Below, piece by piece: positions 6,593 to 22,206 of a stretch of DNA of 28,498 nucleotides. Location: positions 1 to 28,498 of the forward strand of contig JAANOX010000263.1 in assembly GCA_020184695.1 (NCBI GenBank), written 5' to 3'. The position numbers and the translations under genes are program-made. Below the pieces are notes generated by a model. The model did not search any database. It was not told where the DNA came from and was given only the letters and a program-made list of their open reading frames with translations. Origin of the DNA: Histomonas meleagridis 2922-C6/04-290x. Its lineage: Eukaryota > Protista > Parabasalia. The first letter of the stretch is position 1, and each line of letters starts with the position of its first letter.

Positions 6593-8449
6593 TCATAAAA
6601 GAATACAATTAGAATTTTTGTTCCGAAGTAAATTTACTATTTCTATATTATTATTTCTAACTGCTATATGAAGTGCTGTTTCAAATTATTAAAACATATT
6701 CTAAATTATTAAAACATATTCCAAATTATTAAAACATATATAAAATTATTCAAATGAATATTTTTTGCATTAACATCAATTCCTTCTTTATCTAAAAGTA
6801 ATTTTACTATTTCTATATTATTATTTCTAACTGCTATATGAAGTGCTGTTTCAAATTATTAAAACATATTCTAAATTATTAAAACATATTTCAAATTATT
6901 GAAAAATATTCTAAATTATTAAAATATATTCTAAATTATTAAAACATATATAAAATTATTAAAACATATTCTAAATTATTAAAACATATTCCAAATTATT
7001 AAAACATATATAAAATTATTCAAATGAATATTTTTTGCATTAACATCAATTCCTTCTTTATCTAAAAGTAATTTTACTATTTCTATATTATTATTTCTAA
7101 CTGCAATATGAAGTGCTGTTCCAAATTATTAAAACATATTCCAAATTATTAAAACATATATCAAATTATTAAAACATATTTTAAATTCTTCAAATGGATA
7201 ATTCTTGCATTAACATCAATTTCTTTTTGTTCTAAAACATATTTCACAAGTTCGATATTTCCTGATTCTGAAGCAAATGGCAAAATATCTTTTGGAATTT
7301 GATTATTTTGAAGGAAATATTTCACGAGATATAAATTCTCATTTCTTGCTGATACATTTATATCATCAGCATTAACATTAATTCCTATTTCAGACAAAAA
7401 TGCTAAAGTTTCATAATTATCTTTTTTAATACAAAAACTTATCAAATTATTAGTTTTATCTTCAGATATTTTTGGTATTGATTGTATTTTTTCTAATTTA
7501 TTCTCATAAATATATTTAAAGATATCATTTTGATGAAACATAATTGCTGCACAATATGCACCCCTAAATAATGAATGATTTTGTTCACATAAATGAATAA
7601 TTTCAAGATTTCCGCTTGCAACTGCATATTTACCTGTATTTTCGACATTTGCACCGTTCATAAGTAAATATTTAAAACATTTAACCGATCCAAAAAATGC
7701 TGAATAATCAATTAATGTAACATTTTCATGATTAATAAATGAACATCTTTCATAAAGTGATGGTTCAATTGTTTGATTAAAATTAAAATTTGCTTGTGAT
7801 GAAATTTCTTGAAGGTTTTCTATTTCATCTTTTCGAATTATTTTTGCAATTTCAATCGGATTATGTCCTTCTTTAACATATTTCTTATGAAGTTCCCAAT
7901 CATTCTTTGAAAGTTCATCATAATGATCCAAAAAGTATTTTTTAATTGGGTCATTTCCATTAGAGCCAAATGTCATGTGGGTTTGTTTTTGATTTCCTTC
8001 TTTTGTTTTATAATGAGCAAAATATTTTGAATTAATATTTTCAGTAATACTTTTATCAATTAAATTTTGTTCAATCATTTTCTCTATTAAATAATATGAT
8101 TCTTGTGTGCTCATTGTAGATATACGTTTTATAAAAATTGATATTAAATTAGTGATTTTTGATTAATTTCTTCTTCTTTTGTTTGAAGTGTTTTTAAAAA
8201 ATTTAAGTAAATATCATATTTATGTTTTGGTGATGAAAATGTATTATAAACTAATTTACTTATAATAATATTAAATGTTGGAAAATTTGTATCGAATAAT
8301 TCCAATACTTTTTTAACCGACACCTGGTAGTTTTCTTCGGTTAAACTGAATACAATTTTCTCAAGCTCAATTAGGAATTTCAAGCAGGTTGATAGATCGT
8401 TCAACTTTTTATCTCCTGTATTTATGGTGGTAGTATCATCATTCGGCAT
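6593..8449 (-). CDS. DUF3447-type ankyrin repeat protein (locus A); one homopolymer frameshift (~8158) and three spacer-interrupted C-terminal ankyrin junctions
   Basis: ORFs 8144-8449 and 7161-8114 join if A5 becomes A6 and then align with the 18.8 kb paralog. The motifs TLIDYSAFFGSVKCFKYLL, AVASGNLEIIHLCEQ and AIMFHQNDIFKYI are typical of trichomonad DUF3447-ankyrin proteins. Further ankyrin exons at 7122-7030, 6852-6760 and 6682-6593 (TALHIAVRNNNIEIVKLLLDKEGIDVNAKN), ending in TGA. Confidence 0.8.
6683..7199 (-). repeat. Ankyrin units separated by arrays of a 20-nt repeat (NNN + ATATGTTTTAATAATTT); spacers of 77, 177 and 77 nt
   Basis: Spacers 7199-7123, 7029-6853 and 6759-6683 each consist of one 17-mer plus 3, 8 and 3 copies of the 20-mer. 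Confidence 0.9.
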
Positions 8450-8805: not shown

Positions 8806-11104
8806 TTACATAACTGTAAGTAATGTCACTATTTTAGTGTGGCCATTTTCAGAAACATTAATTAAAATAAATCAATGCTTTTGGTATTGAATTTGATTTC
8901 TCTTCTTGCAAGAAGTAATTTAGCTATTTATGTGTTCCCTTTTTCAGAAGTTATCATAAATGCTGTTAAATTTATTTATGTATATTAAATTTTTTAGTTA
9001 AAACATTAAAAAAATAAAAATAAAGTATTTATCATTGATTAATACATGATTTTTATCAAGATAATATTTAATGATATAATATTGATTAGATTCACATGAA
9101 TGCATAAATGAAATTATATTTGTTATTAGGAAATTCCTTAAATTACGAAACAACATCAATACTTTAAAAATTACACAAAATTTTCCAAATTAATATCTTT
9201 CATATAAATATCTGCATCTTTTTTAATGAGAGATTTAACAATTTTTATGTAACCACATGAAGATGCAAACATAATTGTTAACCAAAATAAATTAAATAAT
9301 TTCCAAATATCAGATGAAAATATTTTATTCCTTAAATAAATTTCAAATTTCAATAATTTAAATCTTTAGAATTAATATGAAATTGTTTTCGCTCAAGAAT
9401 TAAACGTACAATATTTTCCAATCCTTTGTTTGATGCAATTCTAAGTGCCTCATCAAACATTTTTATTAAACCATAAATAAAAATCATAAACCCAAAAATC
9501 AATATTACTAACATTTGTATTAATTCCTTCTTTCGTAGTAAATTCAGCAAGTGCATCAATAAGTTCCCCATCATAAATTTCATCATATTCTTGTTCTATT
9601 TTATCTTGATCTGTAATTAAAGGTTTTCCATCATCTTGAATCGCATTTTTATATATAAAATCATTGTATTGAGGTTTTTCTAATCTTTCTGTTATTGTCG
9701 TATATTCAGCAAAATTTTCTATTATATGTTTTTCAACATCACGATTATCACATTTCGTTGGAGCTCCATGAAGTAATCTATGTGAAGCATTCATTTTAAC
9801 AGCTTTATTATTTTGGATACGATCAATTATTGATATATAATTATCTAATGAATGATTACTGATATATTTTATTGACAACATTTATGTTTATCTTAATCAA
9901 GTCAGATGAAGATTTACCATTTGCAACTACTTTAGACATCAAAACTGTTTCTTTTCGAATATTACTTTTTTAATATTGATCTTGAATGTATACTAATTGA
10001 TCTGGAATTTCATAATTATTAATCATAATTTTTAATAAATACCTGATATTGTATCTGTTAAAGTTTCAAATGAAATTTTTCCTATGCTTTTGATTAAGGA
10101 AATTCCAGCATTTTTAACTAAAATCCAAAAGAAATTTGAAATATTAACTCCAATCGTATGACCTTTAGATGCAACAATATCATCAGTATTACATACTGTA
10201 ATAATAAATTTTTCCTTTAAATTTTCATTTCTAATTCTTGTGGCTAATGCATTGCAAACACATAGAGGTGTTCCAATTGTAAATGCTTTAGCATTAATGT
10301 GATCATTAAAACGCAAAAGTGCTGCAGCTATGGCTGCAATCGCTCCTCCACCAGAGTATCCAAAAATATTATTTCTTTGAAGTATTTCTCTTTAAAAACT
10401 CCTTTGAAATGTGAAGTAATATCATCTGCAGCTTTGCTGTAGCCTTTATGCGCTGGACAGCCTTCAATGACTTGACATTCTTGATTTTGCCTGGAGATCA
10501 TGATATCTTTTACTGAAGTAAGATCAGTGCCTTTAATCCATATAAAAATGGATTCATTTCCCCGGAGATCTTTACACGTTACACACCGAAAAATAGGTGT
10601 TATTTGTTCGACTGTGGTTACATCATATTTTTCTGAAACATTAAATGTATATTGATTAGATATTGTAATAACATTACGGGAATCACCTAATATTTTTATT
10701 TTTTTTATATAGTATCATTAGTTCAAGTGAAGATATTGTAGTTGTTATTTTAGGTATTTTCATAGGAGACAGCTGCATTTGCCTGAATTTAATTCTTTTA
10801 TGGGTAATGGAAAAAATGCCAATCAAACATTTCTTAATTGAAACAAAACAGTTATTTAAGTCAAAAACAATCCTGGATTGAATGGATACAACTTTTTGAG
10901 AAATATATGACAGTTTTTGAATGATATGGAACATCATTATACTTATATGATGTTAATGATAAACCCAAAAATATGAAAAAATAAAGTTTGCGTATTCTGA
11001 AATTTTCTCGGAAATATTTAAACAATGGTTTGTACAAATAAAGATAAATATGAATAAAAAATGATTTTAAAGAAAGATACAAACGAAACAAGATTACAAC
11101 TCAT
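8806..11104 (-). pseudogene. Class 3 lipase fused to C-terminal spacer-interrupted ankyrin repeats (locus B); multiply disrupted
   Basis: Stitched frames give IWIKGT, AHKGY, nucleophile elbow GYSGGGAIA, FTIGTP, NTDDIVA and NHSLDNY (His). About five ankyrin repeats follow (EALRIASNKG, TIMFASSCG, SFMHSCESN, TAFMITSEKG, LINVSENGH). Several indels and in-frame TAAs; the 5' end (ATG 11104) is approximate. Confidence 0.7.
9118..9361 (-). other. Two 77-nt spacers (9361-9285, 9194-9118) with 17+3+17+3+17+3+17 register
   Basis: They decode to SKD-E-N-G-W and MKD-C-D-G-I, with GGA exactly at the third embedded codon. Confidence 0.75.
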
Positions 11105-11547: not shown

Positions 11548-12188
11548 ATGGTTGACCTAACATAAAAACCACTTGTAATTAAGGAAATTATTAAAATATC
11601 GCTTGTTGGTTATAACCCTGAGTATATGACTACATTTGCATGTATCTATTTTCAAGGAAACTTCCATGAATTTTGTAAAACAACAATCGGTGTAGACTTT
11701 GGAAGTAAGGAATATCCAATGGGCGACCAAATTCTTGTTGCTCAACTTTGGGATATTGCTGCTCAAGAACGATATGGAAATATGATTCATGTGTATTATC
11801 AAGAATCTGTTGGCGCAGTTATTGTTTTTTTGGTGCTAATCATCCAAATGAACTTGATTTTGTTGAATTGTGGAAAAAAGATATTGAAACAAAAGTATTC
11901 ACGTCAGAAGGTAAACCAATTCTTATACTTTTGGTAGGTTGTTTGAAAGGGGATGTAGATGAAAGATGGAAATCTATGGAAGAAAGATATCGGAAATATA
12001 GTGAAGAAAAAGGATTCATTGGATATTTCACAGTTAATCTCAACACAGGATCAAATGTTGAAGAATCTATTTCCTCACTTGTTAAGTATGTGTATGATAA
12101 TGGTATTCAGCCACAAACTACTGAATATGCAAGGGATCTGCAAGTGACTCCAAAGAATACGAAGCGGGAAGTATGTTATGTACAATAA
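11548..12188 (+). pseudogene. Second Rab32-like paralog, disrupted (in-frame TAA 11563-65, frameshift in T7 run 11825-31); CaaX-like CYVQ end
   Basis: MVDLT*KPLVIKEIIKISLVGYNPEYMT...KTTIGVDFG...WDIAAQERYGNM. ORFs 11626-11937 and 11748-12188 are two frames of one gene, co-linear with 5360-6016. Confidence 0.8.
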
Positions 12189-18839: not shown

Positions 18840-19968
18840 ATGATAACTACTTCCTATTTGATCTTAAAAAATGAATGTTTAGAAAATCGATTTTTCATGG
18901 AACTCCTTTTAAAGTTAGAGAAAATTATCTTTATTTTAAAAGAAGAAAATTTTAATTTAATAGTTGAACAAACAATGAAATTATTTGATTGCATATTCAT
19001 TATGAAATTTCATTATAAGCAAATTGATTTATTTTGTATTTTTATCACAAAAGAATCTGGACAATATATATTATAAATATTTAGAAACAATTCAAACAAA
19101 AGAAGAAGAAATTAACAAAAATATTCAAAAAAAAATTATTGAAATTTTTACTAACATTTTGGTTGATATTAATTCACAAGAATCATTTTATATAATTGAG
19201 AAAATGATTATTCTAAATTTAATTAATAAAAGTATCATAAACAAATTTAATAATATTTTCTACAGAATCAAAAAATTCAGAACTTGTTAAATTTATATTA
19301 GAACAAAAAGGAACTGATATTAATGCTAAAAATATAAAATTTATTTTAATAATTTTATATTTCAAAATAATATTTGGAAATTATTTAAATTATTTGATAC
19401 AGCACTTATGATTGCATCTTCAAATGGTTATACAAAAATAGTTAAATTACTTCTTGAACAAGAAGGAATTGATATTAATGCTAAAGATATTTATTTGTTT
19501 TATTTAATATTTATTTTAATAATTTGGTAATTCAAAATAAGATTTGGAAATTATTTAAATTATTTAGAACAGCACTTATTTTAGCATCTCAAAATGGTCA
19601 TACAGAAATAGTTAAATTACTTCTTGAACAAGAAGGAATTGATGTTAATGCTAAAAATATTTATTTGTTTTATTTGATATTTATTTTAATAATTTCTTAT
19701 TTCAAAATAATATTTGGAAATTATTTAAATTATTTGATACAGCACTTATTTTAGCATCTTGGAATGGTCATACAAAAATAGTTAAATTACTTGTTGAACA
19801 AAACGGAATTGATATTAATGCTAAAGATATTTATTTGTTTTGTTTATAATTTATTTTAATAATTTTGGATTTCAAAACAAGATTTGGAAATTATTTAAGT
19901 TATTTCATACAGCACTTATTTCAGCATCTGAAAAAGGTTATACAGAAATAGTTAAATTATTTAAATAA
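18840..19968 (+). pseudogene. Internally deleted paralog of locus A (locus C): N-terminal domain joined directly to five spacer-interrupted ankyrin repeats
   Basis: The N-terminus (ELLLKLEKIIF..., QTKEEEINK..., QESFYIIEKM) aligns with 8449-8050, then jumps at ~19250 to FSTESKNSELVKFILEQKGTDINAKN. Ankyrin exons at 19396-19488, 19566-19658, 19736-19828 and 19906-19968 (TAA). Confidence 0.75.
19396..19905 (+). repeat. 170-bp tandem repeat (93-nt ankyrin exon + 77-nt spacer), three full units plus flanking partial units
   Basis: agcactt recurs at 19401, 19571, 19741 and 19911 (period 170). Confidence 0.95.
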
Positions 19969-20033
19969 AATTATAAAAAACTTTTAGAGGTAAATTTTAA
20001 AAGTGAATGTAATTATTCATTAACATTACCAAA

Positions 20034-21956
20034 TCAAAACGGATCAATTACTGAAAACGGATCTTTCGGCTGCTTCGCATCTGCTTCTTTTGCATTTCTT
20101 TGTTGGCTTGAGCCGAACATATTATATACGTTGCCATTATTTGCATCATTTCCTATCATATCAAACAAACCATTGTTTTGTTGCTGTTGTTTGCCATTAT
20201 CGAACACATCGAATAATTCGTTGTTTTGTTTTTGTGAATTTCCGTTATTAAACACATCGAATAATTCATTGTTTTGTTGCTGCTGCTGCTGCTGTTTTGG
20301 TTGTGATGTATTACTGCCGCTAAACATATCGAATAAGTCATTGTTTTGTTGCTGTGGCTGCGAAGAAGTTGGACGCTGTTGAGGTGGCGCATTGCCAAAG
20401 ATATCAAACAAGTCTTCGTTTTGCTGCTGTTGCTGCTGTGGCTTTGTTGCTTCATTATCTAAAATGTCGAATAAGTTGTTATTGTTATTTTGTTGCTGTT
20501 GCTGTTGAGAATTTGTTTTCTCATTGCCGAGAATATCAAACAAGTCATCGCTTTGTTGCGGTGGAACATTTTCTTTTGCGCTTTCATTGTCTAACATATC
20601 AAATAAGTCATTGTTTTGCTGTGAATTTGTGTTTGCGTTATCATTAGAAAAGATGTCTTTGGGTTGCTGTGGTTGAGCAGATTCGGAAATTGGCGTTTGT
20701 GAATCATCAATTACTCCGTCGTTACCAAGCATATCAAACAAGCCGCCGGTGCTGTTTGACGGATTTTGTGGTCGCGGCTGTGGAGGTGATTTCTGTGGTG
20801 GTTCTTGTGGTAGTTCATCATCATCAAATATAGATGTACTGTCAAGCATACCAAATGCGTCTTTTTGTGGAGGCCTTTTGTGTGGTTCATTTTGTCCATG
20901 ACGTTGTGGGGCATTTTGGATAGAAGTTGAAGTATATGGTTGATATGTTGGATTTGCTGGTTTTTCACTTTGACCTCCATAATGCTGTTGGATGTTGCTT
21001 GCAACTGAGGAGGCCTTCTCTTTGATGAAATTGGCGGTTTTGTTGAAGAATGATTTAAACTTATCTTTAGCATTTCTGATAGAAAAGTGATCATGGTCTT
21101 CAGTGTGTTGTTGGTGCTCTGGAAAGTAATCTGAGTCCTGATCTAGTCCTTCAAATGGGTCATATTGTTCTTCTGAGTTTCCGATTTCAGGGGTGCTCTG
21201 CTTTTGAACGTTTATTTCCGGAGGTTGTTTTTGAGTGAAAATTGGGTTCTCTCTTTGGGTGTTCCGAATAATTTGCGATGGATCAATATATAAGAAAGGA
21301 TTATTAATCTTCTCTGGTTTTGGTGTAGGTGTTGTTATTTCAATAGGATCACATAATTCATATGTTGAATCTCCAAATATGTTATTTTCTTCTTGAGCAG
21401 AAAATCCTCCAATAAGGTCTTCATTGCTACCATTAGAATTTGTTGGAAATCCGAATATATCTTGATTATTATTTTGATTGTTTGTAGATTGATAATCAAT
21501 CATATTGGGTGAATTAGCTTGGTCATTTTGTGTATGTTCTACTTTCCTCTTCCTTCTTTTACGACGTTCAGGTAGATGTGGTGGTTGCATTGAATGGTCA
21601 ACCCATTTTTCTTGTTCATACTTTTGACGAATAAACTTAGTCATATTTGTAACATCAGTTGATGAAGGTCTTTGGAAATCAGGTGGAAGAAGTGCCTCCC
21701 AATAAGCATTTGCTTTAGCATTACCAACTCTTTCCATCATCGCAGCTTCTTCTTCTTTCCATGTATCAAGTGTACATGAACGAACGAATGAAATATGCGT
21801 TCCTAAAGAACGGTGAATACCGCTGCAATTGATACAAATGAAAATTCCTAGTTTTGAAGAAGCCCATCTTGGATCTTTTGCACCACAGTCTGCACAACGT
21901 TGATTTTCTGGGAGGTTCATCAATGCTGTTACACGGCTCTTATAATCCACAGACAT
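20034..21956 (-). CDS. ArfGAP-domain protein (SMAP/AGFG-like) with low-complexity C-terminal tail, 640 aa
   Basis: Zn-finger CADC-x16-CINC with [12 protein letters not shown] and LDTW. The tail has NPF, DPF and repeated DLFD motifs. ATG 21956 (MSVDYK) follows an Inr-like TCATA; an upstream in-frame ATG (MSEEFW) is an alternative start. Confidence 0.92.
20100..20830 (-). repeat. Degenerate coding repeats: (Q)n-N-N-[DE/G]-L-F-D-[MIV]-[LF] motifs
   Basis: About ten LFD units separated by poly-Q/N linkers in the ArfGAP tail. Confidence 0.8.
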
Positions 21957-22206
21957 TTTGAATATGACCAGATAACCATTCAAAACGCAGTACGTTAAAA
22001 TTAACGTTTCCCAGAACTCTTCGCTCATATTAAAATACAGTAAATAAAATTGAAAAACAGAAGAAAACATCAAATGTTTCAATGGTTCACATCTTAATAT
22101 CTTTTGGAGAATATCACAATAATTTTAATGAAAAACACATAAACATTAATTAACATTTTATTTTGTTACAAAAGTCTGTTATTAATAAGAATAATAATAA
22201 TAATAA

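What the first reader, a model, noticed from the sequence alone, without database searches (positions are those of the whole stretch)
9118..9361. Old, diverged spacers at locus B still keep the 77-nt length and Gly register
Seen (minus strand): TCT AAA GAT|TTAAATTATTGAAATTT|GAA|ATTTATTTAAGGAATAA|AAT|ATTTTCATCTGATATTT|GGA|AATTATTTAATTTATTT|TGG gives SKD-E-N-G-W. ATG AAA GAT|ATTAATTTGGAAAATTT|TGT|GTAATTTTTAAAGTATT|GAT|GTTGTTTCGTAATTTAA|GGA|ATTTCCTAATAACAAAT|ATA gives MKD-C-D-G-I. The ankyrin exons here are highly diverged from each other, and the fourth 17-mer of the first spacer is nearly identical to that of locus C. Inference: the architecture predates these repeats and has spread to a gene with an unrelated N-terminus. 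Neighbouring spacers (about 49 and 61 nt) no longer parse, consistent with decay of this copy.
Basis: seen in the sequence. Interest (0 to 1): 0.75.

Follow-up and report, generated by a model that had tools for sequence, protein, structure and literature searches.

The report
Broken lipase-ankyrin gene with 17-base inserts
In the poultry parasite Histomonas meleagridis, a dead copy of a lipase-ankyrin gene still shows a genome-wide oddity in which each ankyrin loop is written as single codons separated by fixed 17-base inserts, which fit no known intron type and would have to be removed or skipped to make the protein.

Summary
On the minus strand, 9285-9361 and 9118-9194 are two 77-nt spacers that each parse as four 17-nt inserts around three single codons, with Gly (GGA) third.

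The gene is a broken class-3 lipase plus ankyrin gene. Its lipase part is frameshifted and full of stops, its last ankyrin exon carries a TAA, and the 49- and 61-nt neighbouring spacers are deletion derivatives of a paralogue's 57- and 80-nt spacers.

In paralogues the four loop codons of the first spacer are identical, while the inserts differ at 24-35% of sites. Across 111 unique spacers the single codons carry no stops (17.7 expected). They vary like ankyrin binding-surface residues, and the inserts drift at the synonymous rate.

Genome-wide spacer lengths are discrete: 40, 60, 80, 100 and 120, plus 63 and 83. Two metagenome contigs from distant relatives show one 17-nt insert per repeat (period 116).

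The codons are therefore read, and the inserts must be removed, most likely from the RNA. Earlier agents of this scan reported the same system elsewhere in this genome. No paper describing it turned up in four literature searches.

The parts
8877..10784 (-). Pseudogene of a class-3 lipase plus ankyrin gene family (locus B)
   Evidence: tblastn of the intact paralogue ORF (L024) finds the lipase part at 10784-10701, 10690-10361 and 10319-9468 in three different frames. There are many stops around 9900-10030, and the GHSIGG segment is missing. Pfam Lipase_3 scores 18.4 bits on the fragment against 60.7 bits on L024.
9455..9503 (-). 49-nt spacer between the lipase part and the first ankyrin exon: a damaged three-insert spacer
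   Evidence: It aligns to the 57-nt spacer of L022 (17+3+17+3+17), with an 8-nt deletion inside the first insert.
9362..9454 (-). Ankyrin exon e1 (31 codons, DEALRIAS...HINSKD)
   Evidence: Translation. It is homologous to the e1 exons of L022-L025.
9285..9361 (-). First 77-nt spacer: four 17-nt inserts around codons GAA, AAT and GGA, followed by TGG
   Evidence: The codons are identical in L022 and L025, and the inserts differ at 16-24 of 68 sites. The first insert starts with T, the only non-purine start among 72 inserts of the family.
9195..9284 (-). Ankyrin exon e2 (30 codons, WLTIMFASS...IYMKD)
9118..9194 (-). Second 77-nt spacer: four 17-nt inserts around codons TGT, GAT and GGA, followed by ATA
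   Evidence: L022 has TGT GAT GGA AGA, and L025 has GAA GAA GGA AGA, at the same offsets.
9028..9117 (-). Ankyrin exon e3 (30 codons, IISFMHSCES...LINDK)
8967..9027 (-). 61-nt spacer: a damaged four-insert spacer
   Evidence: Compared with the L022 spacer, it has one extra base and deletions of 21 and 2 nt that remove the GGA codon.
8877..8966 (-). Ankyrin exon e4 with an in-frame TAA at 8930-8928
   Evidence: L022 has GAA at this codon.
6640..8449 (-). Locus A, a DUF3447-ankyrin gene with spacers of 80, 180 and about 80 nt built of 20-nt units (context)
18840..19970 (+). Locus C, a truncated DUF3447-ankyrin copy with spacers of 65, 80, 80 and 80 nt (context)

Best explanation
Locus B is a recently dead member of a small Histomonas meleagridis gene family that joins a class-3 lipase domain to an ankyrin-repeat array. 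As in several thousand other ankyrin repeats of this genome, the four-residue hairpin loop (x-x-Gly-x) between repeats is not written contiguously. Each loop codon stands alone and is followed by a 17-nt, AT-rich, unstructured insert. The insert starts with a purine and usually ends A-T-T-T. A normal junction therefore measures 4x17 + 3x3 = 77 nt before the last loop codon. The single codons are genuine coding positions, so the inserts have to be taken out. The most likely route is excision of each 17-nt piece from the transcript by a length-measuring mechanism that does not use GT-AG or AT-AC ends. New units arise by tandem duplication of 20 nt (insert plus codon) and are lost as exact 17-nt deletions. 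In locus B two junctions are still intact. The other two, the lipase domain and the last exon have been hit by deletions, frameshifts and stops. Shown here: the anatomy, the coding signature of the single codons, the discrete length spectrum, and the decay of locus B. Inferred, not shown: that removal happens, and that it happens at the RNA level.
For: Identity of the genome: 43,133,364 bases in 281 contigs, the published figures for the attenuated H. meleagridis strain. Locus B anatomy and decay. Paralogue test: 0 of 12 codon sites differ, against 16-24 of 68 insert sites, among B, L022 and L025. In 111 unique 80-nt spacers there are 0 stops in 444 single codons against 17.7 expected (P about 2e-8 under independence), and 0 stops in 165 exons. 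The third codon is Gly in 84%. Codons 1, 2 and 4 have 2.6-3.0 bits of entropy, like the most variable exon residues, which are the ankyrin surface positions. Inserts diverge at 0.113 against 0.103 at four-fold sites, with no 3-base periodicity. Genome-wide gaps between fixed exon anchors: 2 at 1-30 nt, 102 at 31-60 nt, 2423 at 61-90 nt and 41 at 91-120 nt. Of 100 listed in the 31-60 bin, 72 are 60 and 17 are 40. Of 100 listed in the 61-90 bin, 79 are 80, 6 are 63, 6 are 83 and 4 are 66. In the 91-120 bin, 38 are 100 or 120. The 63-nt class is the 80-nt class minus exactly one insert, with the codon kept. Insert grammar: purine at position 1 in 71 of 72, T at position 15 in 68 of 72. Distant relatives: the repeat period is exactly 116 = 99 + 17 in L027 and L028, and only removals starting 4-6 nt into the junction give stop-free loops with Gly third.
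Against: No known machinery removes 17-nt pieces without conserved ends, and single-codon exons in series are unprecedented. About 80% of the 80-nt spacers keep a stop-free path with one frameshift, so read-through is not excluded for that length class by stops alone. The spacers are related copies, so the statistical tests overstate independence. A few junctions are off the lattice (81, 82, 54 nt), and one intact-looking paralogue (L024) has an 18-nt insert. Locus B itself is a pseudogene, so it says nothing about present function.
Confidence: 0.7

Rival explanations
1. The ribosome, not an RNA-processing step, skips each insert (translational bypassing), so the mature mRNA still contains the inserts.
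For: It would explain why there are no splice signals and why a fixed length matters. The inserts are U-rich and unstructured. No spliced products were seen among database proteins.
Against: Known bypassing needs matching take-off and landing codons, and here the flanking codons match in only 40 of 444 cases. No stabilising structure is predicted: z-scores are +1.84, -0.59, +0.09 and -0.95. Four to twelve hops per loop over many repeats would leave almost no full-length protein. Earlier agents of this scan report RNA data in which the inserts are absent (not verified here).
Confidence: 0.08
2. Each spacer is one ordinary intron that contains a 20-nt minisatellite. The whole 77-80 nt is spliced out, the protein lacks the loop, and the 'codons' are only the variable part of the repeat unit.
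For: TRF finds plain period-20 arrays with variable copy number, for example 8.6 copies at 6853-7024. Copy number changes in steps of 20.
Against: The spacers have no GT...AG ends: none of 72 inserts ends in G. Stop codons are absent from the variable triplets (0 against 17.7 expected). Gly is conserved and the other triplets are hypervariable, as in ankyrin loops. Exact 17-nt deletions keep the codon. Triplets are conserved while inserts diverge among paralogues. A repeat without its hairpin loop would not be a normal ankyrin repeat.
Confidence: 0.06
3. The arrays are untranslated relics. Some insertion or duplication process broke up ancestral loops, and the codon-like pattern is inherited, not maintained.
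For: Locus B, L022, L023 and locus C are visibly broken genes. The published annotation has at most one intron per gene, so it cannot model these arrays. No homologous proteins were found for the lipase family.
Against: There are 165 of 165 exons without a stop and 444 triplets without a stop, although the inserts diverge by 11%. The triplets change three times faster than neutral sites yet never become stops. There are about 10,700 exon candidates in the genome. The architecture is kept in a relative at 53% protein identity and in distant metagenome genes.
Confidence: 0.07
4. The spacer is translated with one programmed -1/+2 frameshift, giving a long hydrophobic loop.
For: 81 of 100 80-nt spacers and 11 of 15 63-nt spacers have a stop-free path. 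In L027 and L028 the frame moves by +2 at every repeat.
Against: No such path exists in any of the 60-, 140-, 180-, 220- or 240-nt spacers, 0 of 12. Spacer classes of 80, 63 and 60 nt would need different shifts. Insert diversity shows no codon periodicity (0.105, 0.110, 0.124) and equals the synonymous rate. The variable triplet at offset 37 lies in a frame that is otherwise full of stops.
Confidence: 0.04

Closest known systems
Tiny fixed-length spliceosomal introns (Stentor 15-16 nt, Bigelowiella nucleomorph 18-21 nt, Trichomonas vaginalis type B 23-25 nt; PMC12316389)
   Same: Very short, with a very narrow length distribution, AT-rich and present in high numbers, which suggests a machine that measures length.
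   Different: Those introns keep GT-AG ends, and in Trichomonas a branch/3' motif. The 17-nt inserts start A or G then T and end in T, never in AG. They stand in series separated by single codons and are concentrated in ankyrin loops.
Translational bypassing elements (phage T4 gene 60; 'byps' of Magnusiomyces mitochondria) - from general knowledge
   Same: Short non-coding stretches inside ORFs, without splice signals, that are not represented in the protein.
   Different: Bypassing uses matching take-off and landing codons and often a hairpin. Here the codons match in 9% of cases and no structure is predicted. Lengths there are 27-55 nt and variable.
Non-conventional introns of euglenids - from general knowledge
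   Same: No GT-AG ends; nuclear protein-coding genes.
   Different: Those are variable in length and defined by a stable stem that pairs the intron ends. The spacers here fold no better than shuffled sequence.
Minisatellite or tandem-repeat expansion inside a gene
   Same: The 20-nt units expand and contract in tandem, from 2 to 12 units.
   Different: Variation is confined to 3 of the 20 positions, avoids stop codons and follows the ankyrin loop pattern.
Ankyrin-repeat proteins of trichomonads with DUF3447 (PF11929), and class-3 lipases (PF01764)
   Same: The exons are ordinary ankyrin repeats and the N-terminal domains are ordinary Pfam families.
   Different: The coding sequence is interrupted at every loop. 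The one T. vaginalis relative among the protein hits (P0023) is an annotated protein with ankyrin Pfam domains. That T. vaginalis ankyrin genes are in general contiguous ORFs is from general knowledge, not tested here.

Membership tests
U2-type spliceosomal intron | GT (or GC) at the 5' end and AG at the 3' end | tested here: not met
   In 72 inserts of the lipase-ankyrin family, position 1 is A 51, G 20, T 1 and position 2 is T 54, A 18. Positions 16 and 17 are never G. The consensus inserts of the large family contain almost no G.
U2-type spliceosomal intron | Parabasalid branch/3' motif (ACTAAC...AG) as described for Trichomonas | tested here: not met
   No such motif is present in any spacer read. 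The motif is as described in PMC12316389.
U2-type spliceosomal intron | Absent from the mature mRNA | not testable with these tools
Earlier agents report supporting RNA data, which I did not verify.
U12-type (AT-AC) intron | ATATCC at the 5' end and AC at the 3' end | tested here: not met
   Position 17 is C in 6 of 72 inserts and position 16 is A in 12 of 72. There is no ATATCC start.
Translational bypass element | Matching take-off and landing codons | tested here: not met
   40 of 444 flanking codon pairs are identical.
Structure-defined introns (euglenid non-conventional, bulge-helix-bulge, IRE1 type) | A stable structure that pairs or presents the ends | tested here: not met
   Fold z-scores are +1.84, -0.59, +0.09 and -0.95 for four spacers with their flanks.
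Programmed ribosomal frameshift | An open path through the spacer with one shift | tested here: inconclusive
   A path exists in 81 of 100 80-nt spacers, but in 0 of 12 spacers of 60, 140-240 nt. Codon periodicity is absent.
Ankyrin repeat (PF00023/PF12796) | 33-34-residue repeat with the hairpin loop x-x-G-x before T-A-L | tested here: met
   Exons match by tblastn and Pfam. The loop is supplied by the single codons, with Gly third in 84%.
Class-3 lipase (PF01764) | Pfam score above the gathering cut-off and the G-H-S-x-G nucleophile motif | tested here: not met
   For locus B, the score is 18.4 bits against a cut-off of 22, and the GHSIGG segment is lost by frameshift. Both features are met by paralogue L024 (60.7 bits; motif present).

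The most novel reading that the evidence does not exclude
Parabasalids of the Histomonas lineage, and more distant relatives, have an undescribed class of intervening sequence: fixed 17-nt, signal-poor pieces excised from pre-mRNA by a length-measuring route. That route is either non-spliceosomal or a strongly derived form of splicing. The pieces number in the tens of thousands per genome, spread by 20-nt tandem duplication, and leave single-codon exons. If so, the real proteome of these parasites holds thousands of ankyrin proteins that current annotation misses.
Probability: 0.55. Interest if true: 0.92.

Novelty: categorically new. Interest (0 to 1): 0.78.

Why it matters
If the inserts are removed from RNA, this is a new way of interrupting genes. 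The pieces are close to the smallest known introns (15 nt in Stentor) but lack their signals, the exons are a single codon long, and there are probably tens of thousands of copies in a 43-Mb genome. The published annotation, which has 573-638 introns and at most one per gene, would then miss or truncate a very large ankyrin family in a pathogen of poultry. The family includes lipase-ankyrin fusions. Locus B adds three things to the earlier reports. The architecture is not tied to one gene family. It is old enough for the inserts to have diverged while the codons stayed. And dead copies lose the 17-nt register through ordinary deletions, which gives a natural negative control.

Tried and rejected
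Word-index protein searches found nothing for the locus B N-terminal ORF or for the intact lipase paralogue ORF. This is inconclusive, because in the second search the candidate list was saturated.

The protein search with locus A gave only products that stop in, or read into, the first spacer. No spliced product was found.

I replaced it with anchored pattern counts over the whole genome.

The scan of genome contigs found two contaminated MAG contigs without ankyrin arrays.

RNA folding showed no structure.

Four literature searches found no description of these inserts. The Giardia ankyrin 'introns' in PMC10711314 are unrelated 93-nt events.

I rejected ciliate-like stop-codon reassignment, because the spacers shift the frame and long ordinary ORFs in the window use the standard code.

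The large HMMER search, structure prediction and fold search were not used, because the open question is RNA processing, not protein identity.

Full report
**Source.** The window is contig C263 of a genome with 43,133,364 bases in 281 contigs. These are exactly the figures published for the attenuated strain of Histomonas meleagridis (PMC8529796, Table 1). That paper reports 28% GC, about 11,000 genes and at most one intron per gene.

**The observation.**
- After GAT (9364-9362) come 77 nt (9361-9285), made of four 17-nt pieces around GAA, AAT and GGA, followed by TGG.
- After GAT (9197-9195) come 77 nt (9194-9118) around TGT, GAT and GGA, followed by ATA.
- The flanking exons are ankyrin repeats lacking exactly the four loop residues. 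With the single codons, the Gly-to-Ala spacing of the ankyrin consensus is restored.
- The neighbouring spacers are 49 nt (9503-9455) and 61 nt (9027-8967).

**What gene this is.** The "unrelated N-terminus" has paralogues in the genome.
- Two paralogues (L024, L025) carry ORFs of 489 and 449 residues that end at the first ankyrin junction. The L024 ORF holds a class-3 lipase domain: PF01764, 60.7 bits against a cut-off of 22.
- In the window the same domain lies at 10784-9468 in three different frames. It has many stops near 9900-10030 and has lost the GHSIGG nucleophile segment.
- The last ankyrin exon has TAA (8930-8928) where L022 has GAA.
- Locus B is therefore a pseudogene of a lipase-ankyrin family. 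L022 and L023 are damaged too.

**The decayed spacers.** Aligned with L022, the 49-nt spacer is a 57-nt spacer (17+3+17+3+17) that lost 8 nt inside its first insert. The 61-nt spacer is a normal four-insert spacer with one extra base and deletions of 21 and 2 nt that remove the GGA. The first insert of the 9361-9285 spacer starts with T. It is the only non-purine start among 72 inserts of the family.

**Are the single codons codons?**
- Among B, L022 and L025, the four codons of the first junction are identical (0 of 12 sites differ). The inserts differ at 16, 19 and 24 of 68 sites.
- In the paralogues almost all spacers are exactly 80 nt, counted to the Thr codon, despite strong sequence divergence.
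- I collected 165 junctions from 20 other loci and the window.
  - None of the 165 exons has a stop.
  - In 111 unique 80-nt spacers the four triplet positions have no stop, against 17.7 expected from their own base frequencies. Neighbouring offsets carry stops in up to 102 of 111.
  - The third triplet is GGA, or rarely GGG, in 84%.
  - Triplets 1, 2 and 4 have 2.6-3.0 bits of amino-acid entropy. This matches the two most variable exon residues (2.9 and 3.3 bits), which are the known surface positions of ankyrin repeats.
- Inserts differ between loci at 0.113 per site and four-fold degenerate sites at 0.103, while the triplets differ at 0.37. Insert diversity has no three-base periodicity.
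- The triplets therefore behave as translated, partly diversifying codons, and the inserts as nearly neutral filler of fixed length.

I used fixed anchors at the exon end and the next exon start. The genome holds:

| Gap range (nt) | Junctions | Lengths observed |
|---|---|---|
| 1-30 | 2 | one is a contiguous 12-nt loop with Gly third |
| 31-60 | 102 | of 100 listed: 72 are 60, 17 are 40 |
| 61-90 | 2423 | of 100 listed: 79 are 80, 6 are 63, 6 are 83, 4 are 66 |
| 91-120 | 41 | 25 are 100, 13 are 120 |

- The 63-nt class is the 80-nt class minus one exact insert, with its codon kept. The 83-nt class has one more contiguous codon.
- The distribution is discrete, so the stated refutation criterion is not met.
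- About 10,700 candidate exons exist in the genome.

**Age and spread.**
- Proteins from ENA assemblies that are 50-58% identical to locus A stop in, or read into, the first spacer. The tail of P0004 has the same length as the H. meleagridis spacer translation, with Phe-Gly at the same place.
- Two JGI metagenome contigs (L027, L028; 38% and 23% identity, 32-33% GC) carry DUF3447-type ankyrin genes. Their repeats have a period of exactly 116 nt (99 + 17), and the frame moves by +2 at every repeat.
- In those contigs, only removal of 17 nt starting 4-6 nt into the junction gives stop-free loops with Gly third.
- One insert per loop thus looks ancestral, and four per loop looks like a later expansion by 20-nt duplication. 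That process is still visible in spacers of 7 to 12 units.

**Mechanism.**
- The inserts have a purine at position 1 (71 of 72), T at positions 2-3, A at 14 and T at 15-17. They never end in AG.
- They fold no better than shuffled sequence.
- Flanking codons match in only 9% of cases.
- A single frameshift path exists in most 80-nt spacers, but in none of the 60- or 140-240-nt ones.

I therefore favour excision of each 17-nt piece from the transcript by an unknown, length-dependent route. This step is inferred. Earlier agents of this scan, working on other parts of this genome, reached the same anatomy and state that public RNA data lack the inserts. I did not verify that.

**Literature.** Four full-text searches found nothing on such inserts. 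The shortest parabasalid introns described are 23-25 nt and have conventional ends.

**Verdict.** Locus B is a dead lipase-ankyrin gene that preserves two intact examples of a genome-wide, apparently undescribed kind of gene interruption.

Noticed in passing
window 11626-12188 (+), around 11826-11832: A Rab-like GTPase gene is split into two overlapping ORFs by a frame change at a run of seven T. This is either a homopolymer error of the nanopore-based assembly or a real frameshift. The same kind of error could explain the rare 81- and 82-nt spacers.
   Followed up: partly
window 18840-19398 (+): Locus C has a truncated and frame-broken N-terminal DUF3447 region compared with locus A. Its first spacer is 65 nt, 2 nt off the lattice. 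It is probably another pseudogene.
   Followed up: partly
window 6850-7029 (-); L008 2314-4383: These spacers are expanded to 7-12 units of 20 nt. The 17-nt part is almost invariant, and only the triplet changes (GGA, GAA, AGA, GTA, AAA, TAT), never to a stop. They would give Gly/Glu/Arg-rich loops of 7-12 residues.
   Followed up: partly
L027 4268-5340; L028 4526-5310: Metagenome contigs Ga0074193_1001881 and Ga0209639_1000399 carry trichomonad-type ankyrin genes with an exact 116-nt repeat period, that is, one 17-nt insert per loop. The source organisms were not identified.
   Followed up: partly
L024 and L023, first ankyrin junction (L024 about 2052-2132): An 81-nt spacer whose fourth insert is 18 nt sits in a paralogue with an otherwise intact lipase ORF. 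This could be a tolerated length variant, an assembly error or an early lesion.
   Followed up: no
G000:C45:69082-69114 (-): This is the only clearly insert-free junction found with the anchors: a contiguous 12-nt loop reading F-A-G-Y. It shows what the uninterrupted state looks like.
   Followed up: no
80-nt spacers in L001-L020 and window: The frame of the downstream exon is open through the whole spacer in most copies, and 81 of 100 spacers allow a stop-free path with one frameshift. For sequence this AT-rich that is unexpected. It may be inherited from one ancestral spacer or may mean something.
   Followed up: partly
window 20034-22082 (-): An ArfGAP-domain ORF of 682 residues has a long Gln/Asn-rich tail with repeated N-N-D/E-L-F-D-M/I/V motifs (period 48 nt at 20171-20282).
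   Followed up: no
L029 (CALUSQ010000040.1) and L030 (JAISCG010000005.1): Contigs filed under bacterial MAGs (Gastranaerophilales, Holosporaceae) encode relatives of the parabasalid DUF3447 protein (55% and 43% identity). They are likely eukaryotic contamination of those bins.
   Followed up: no
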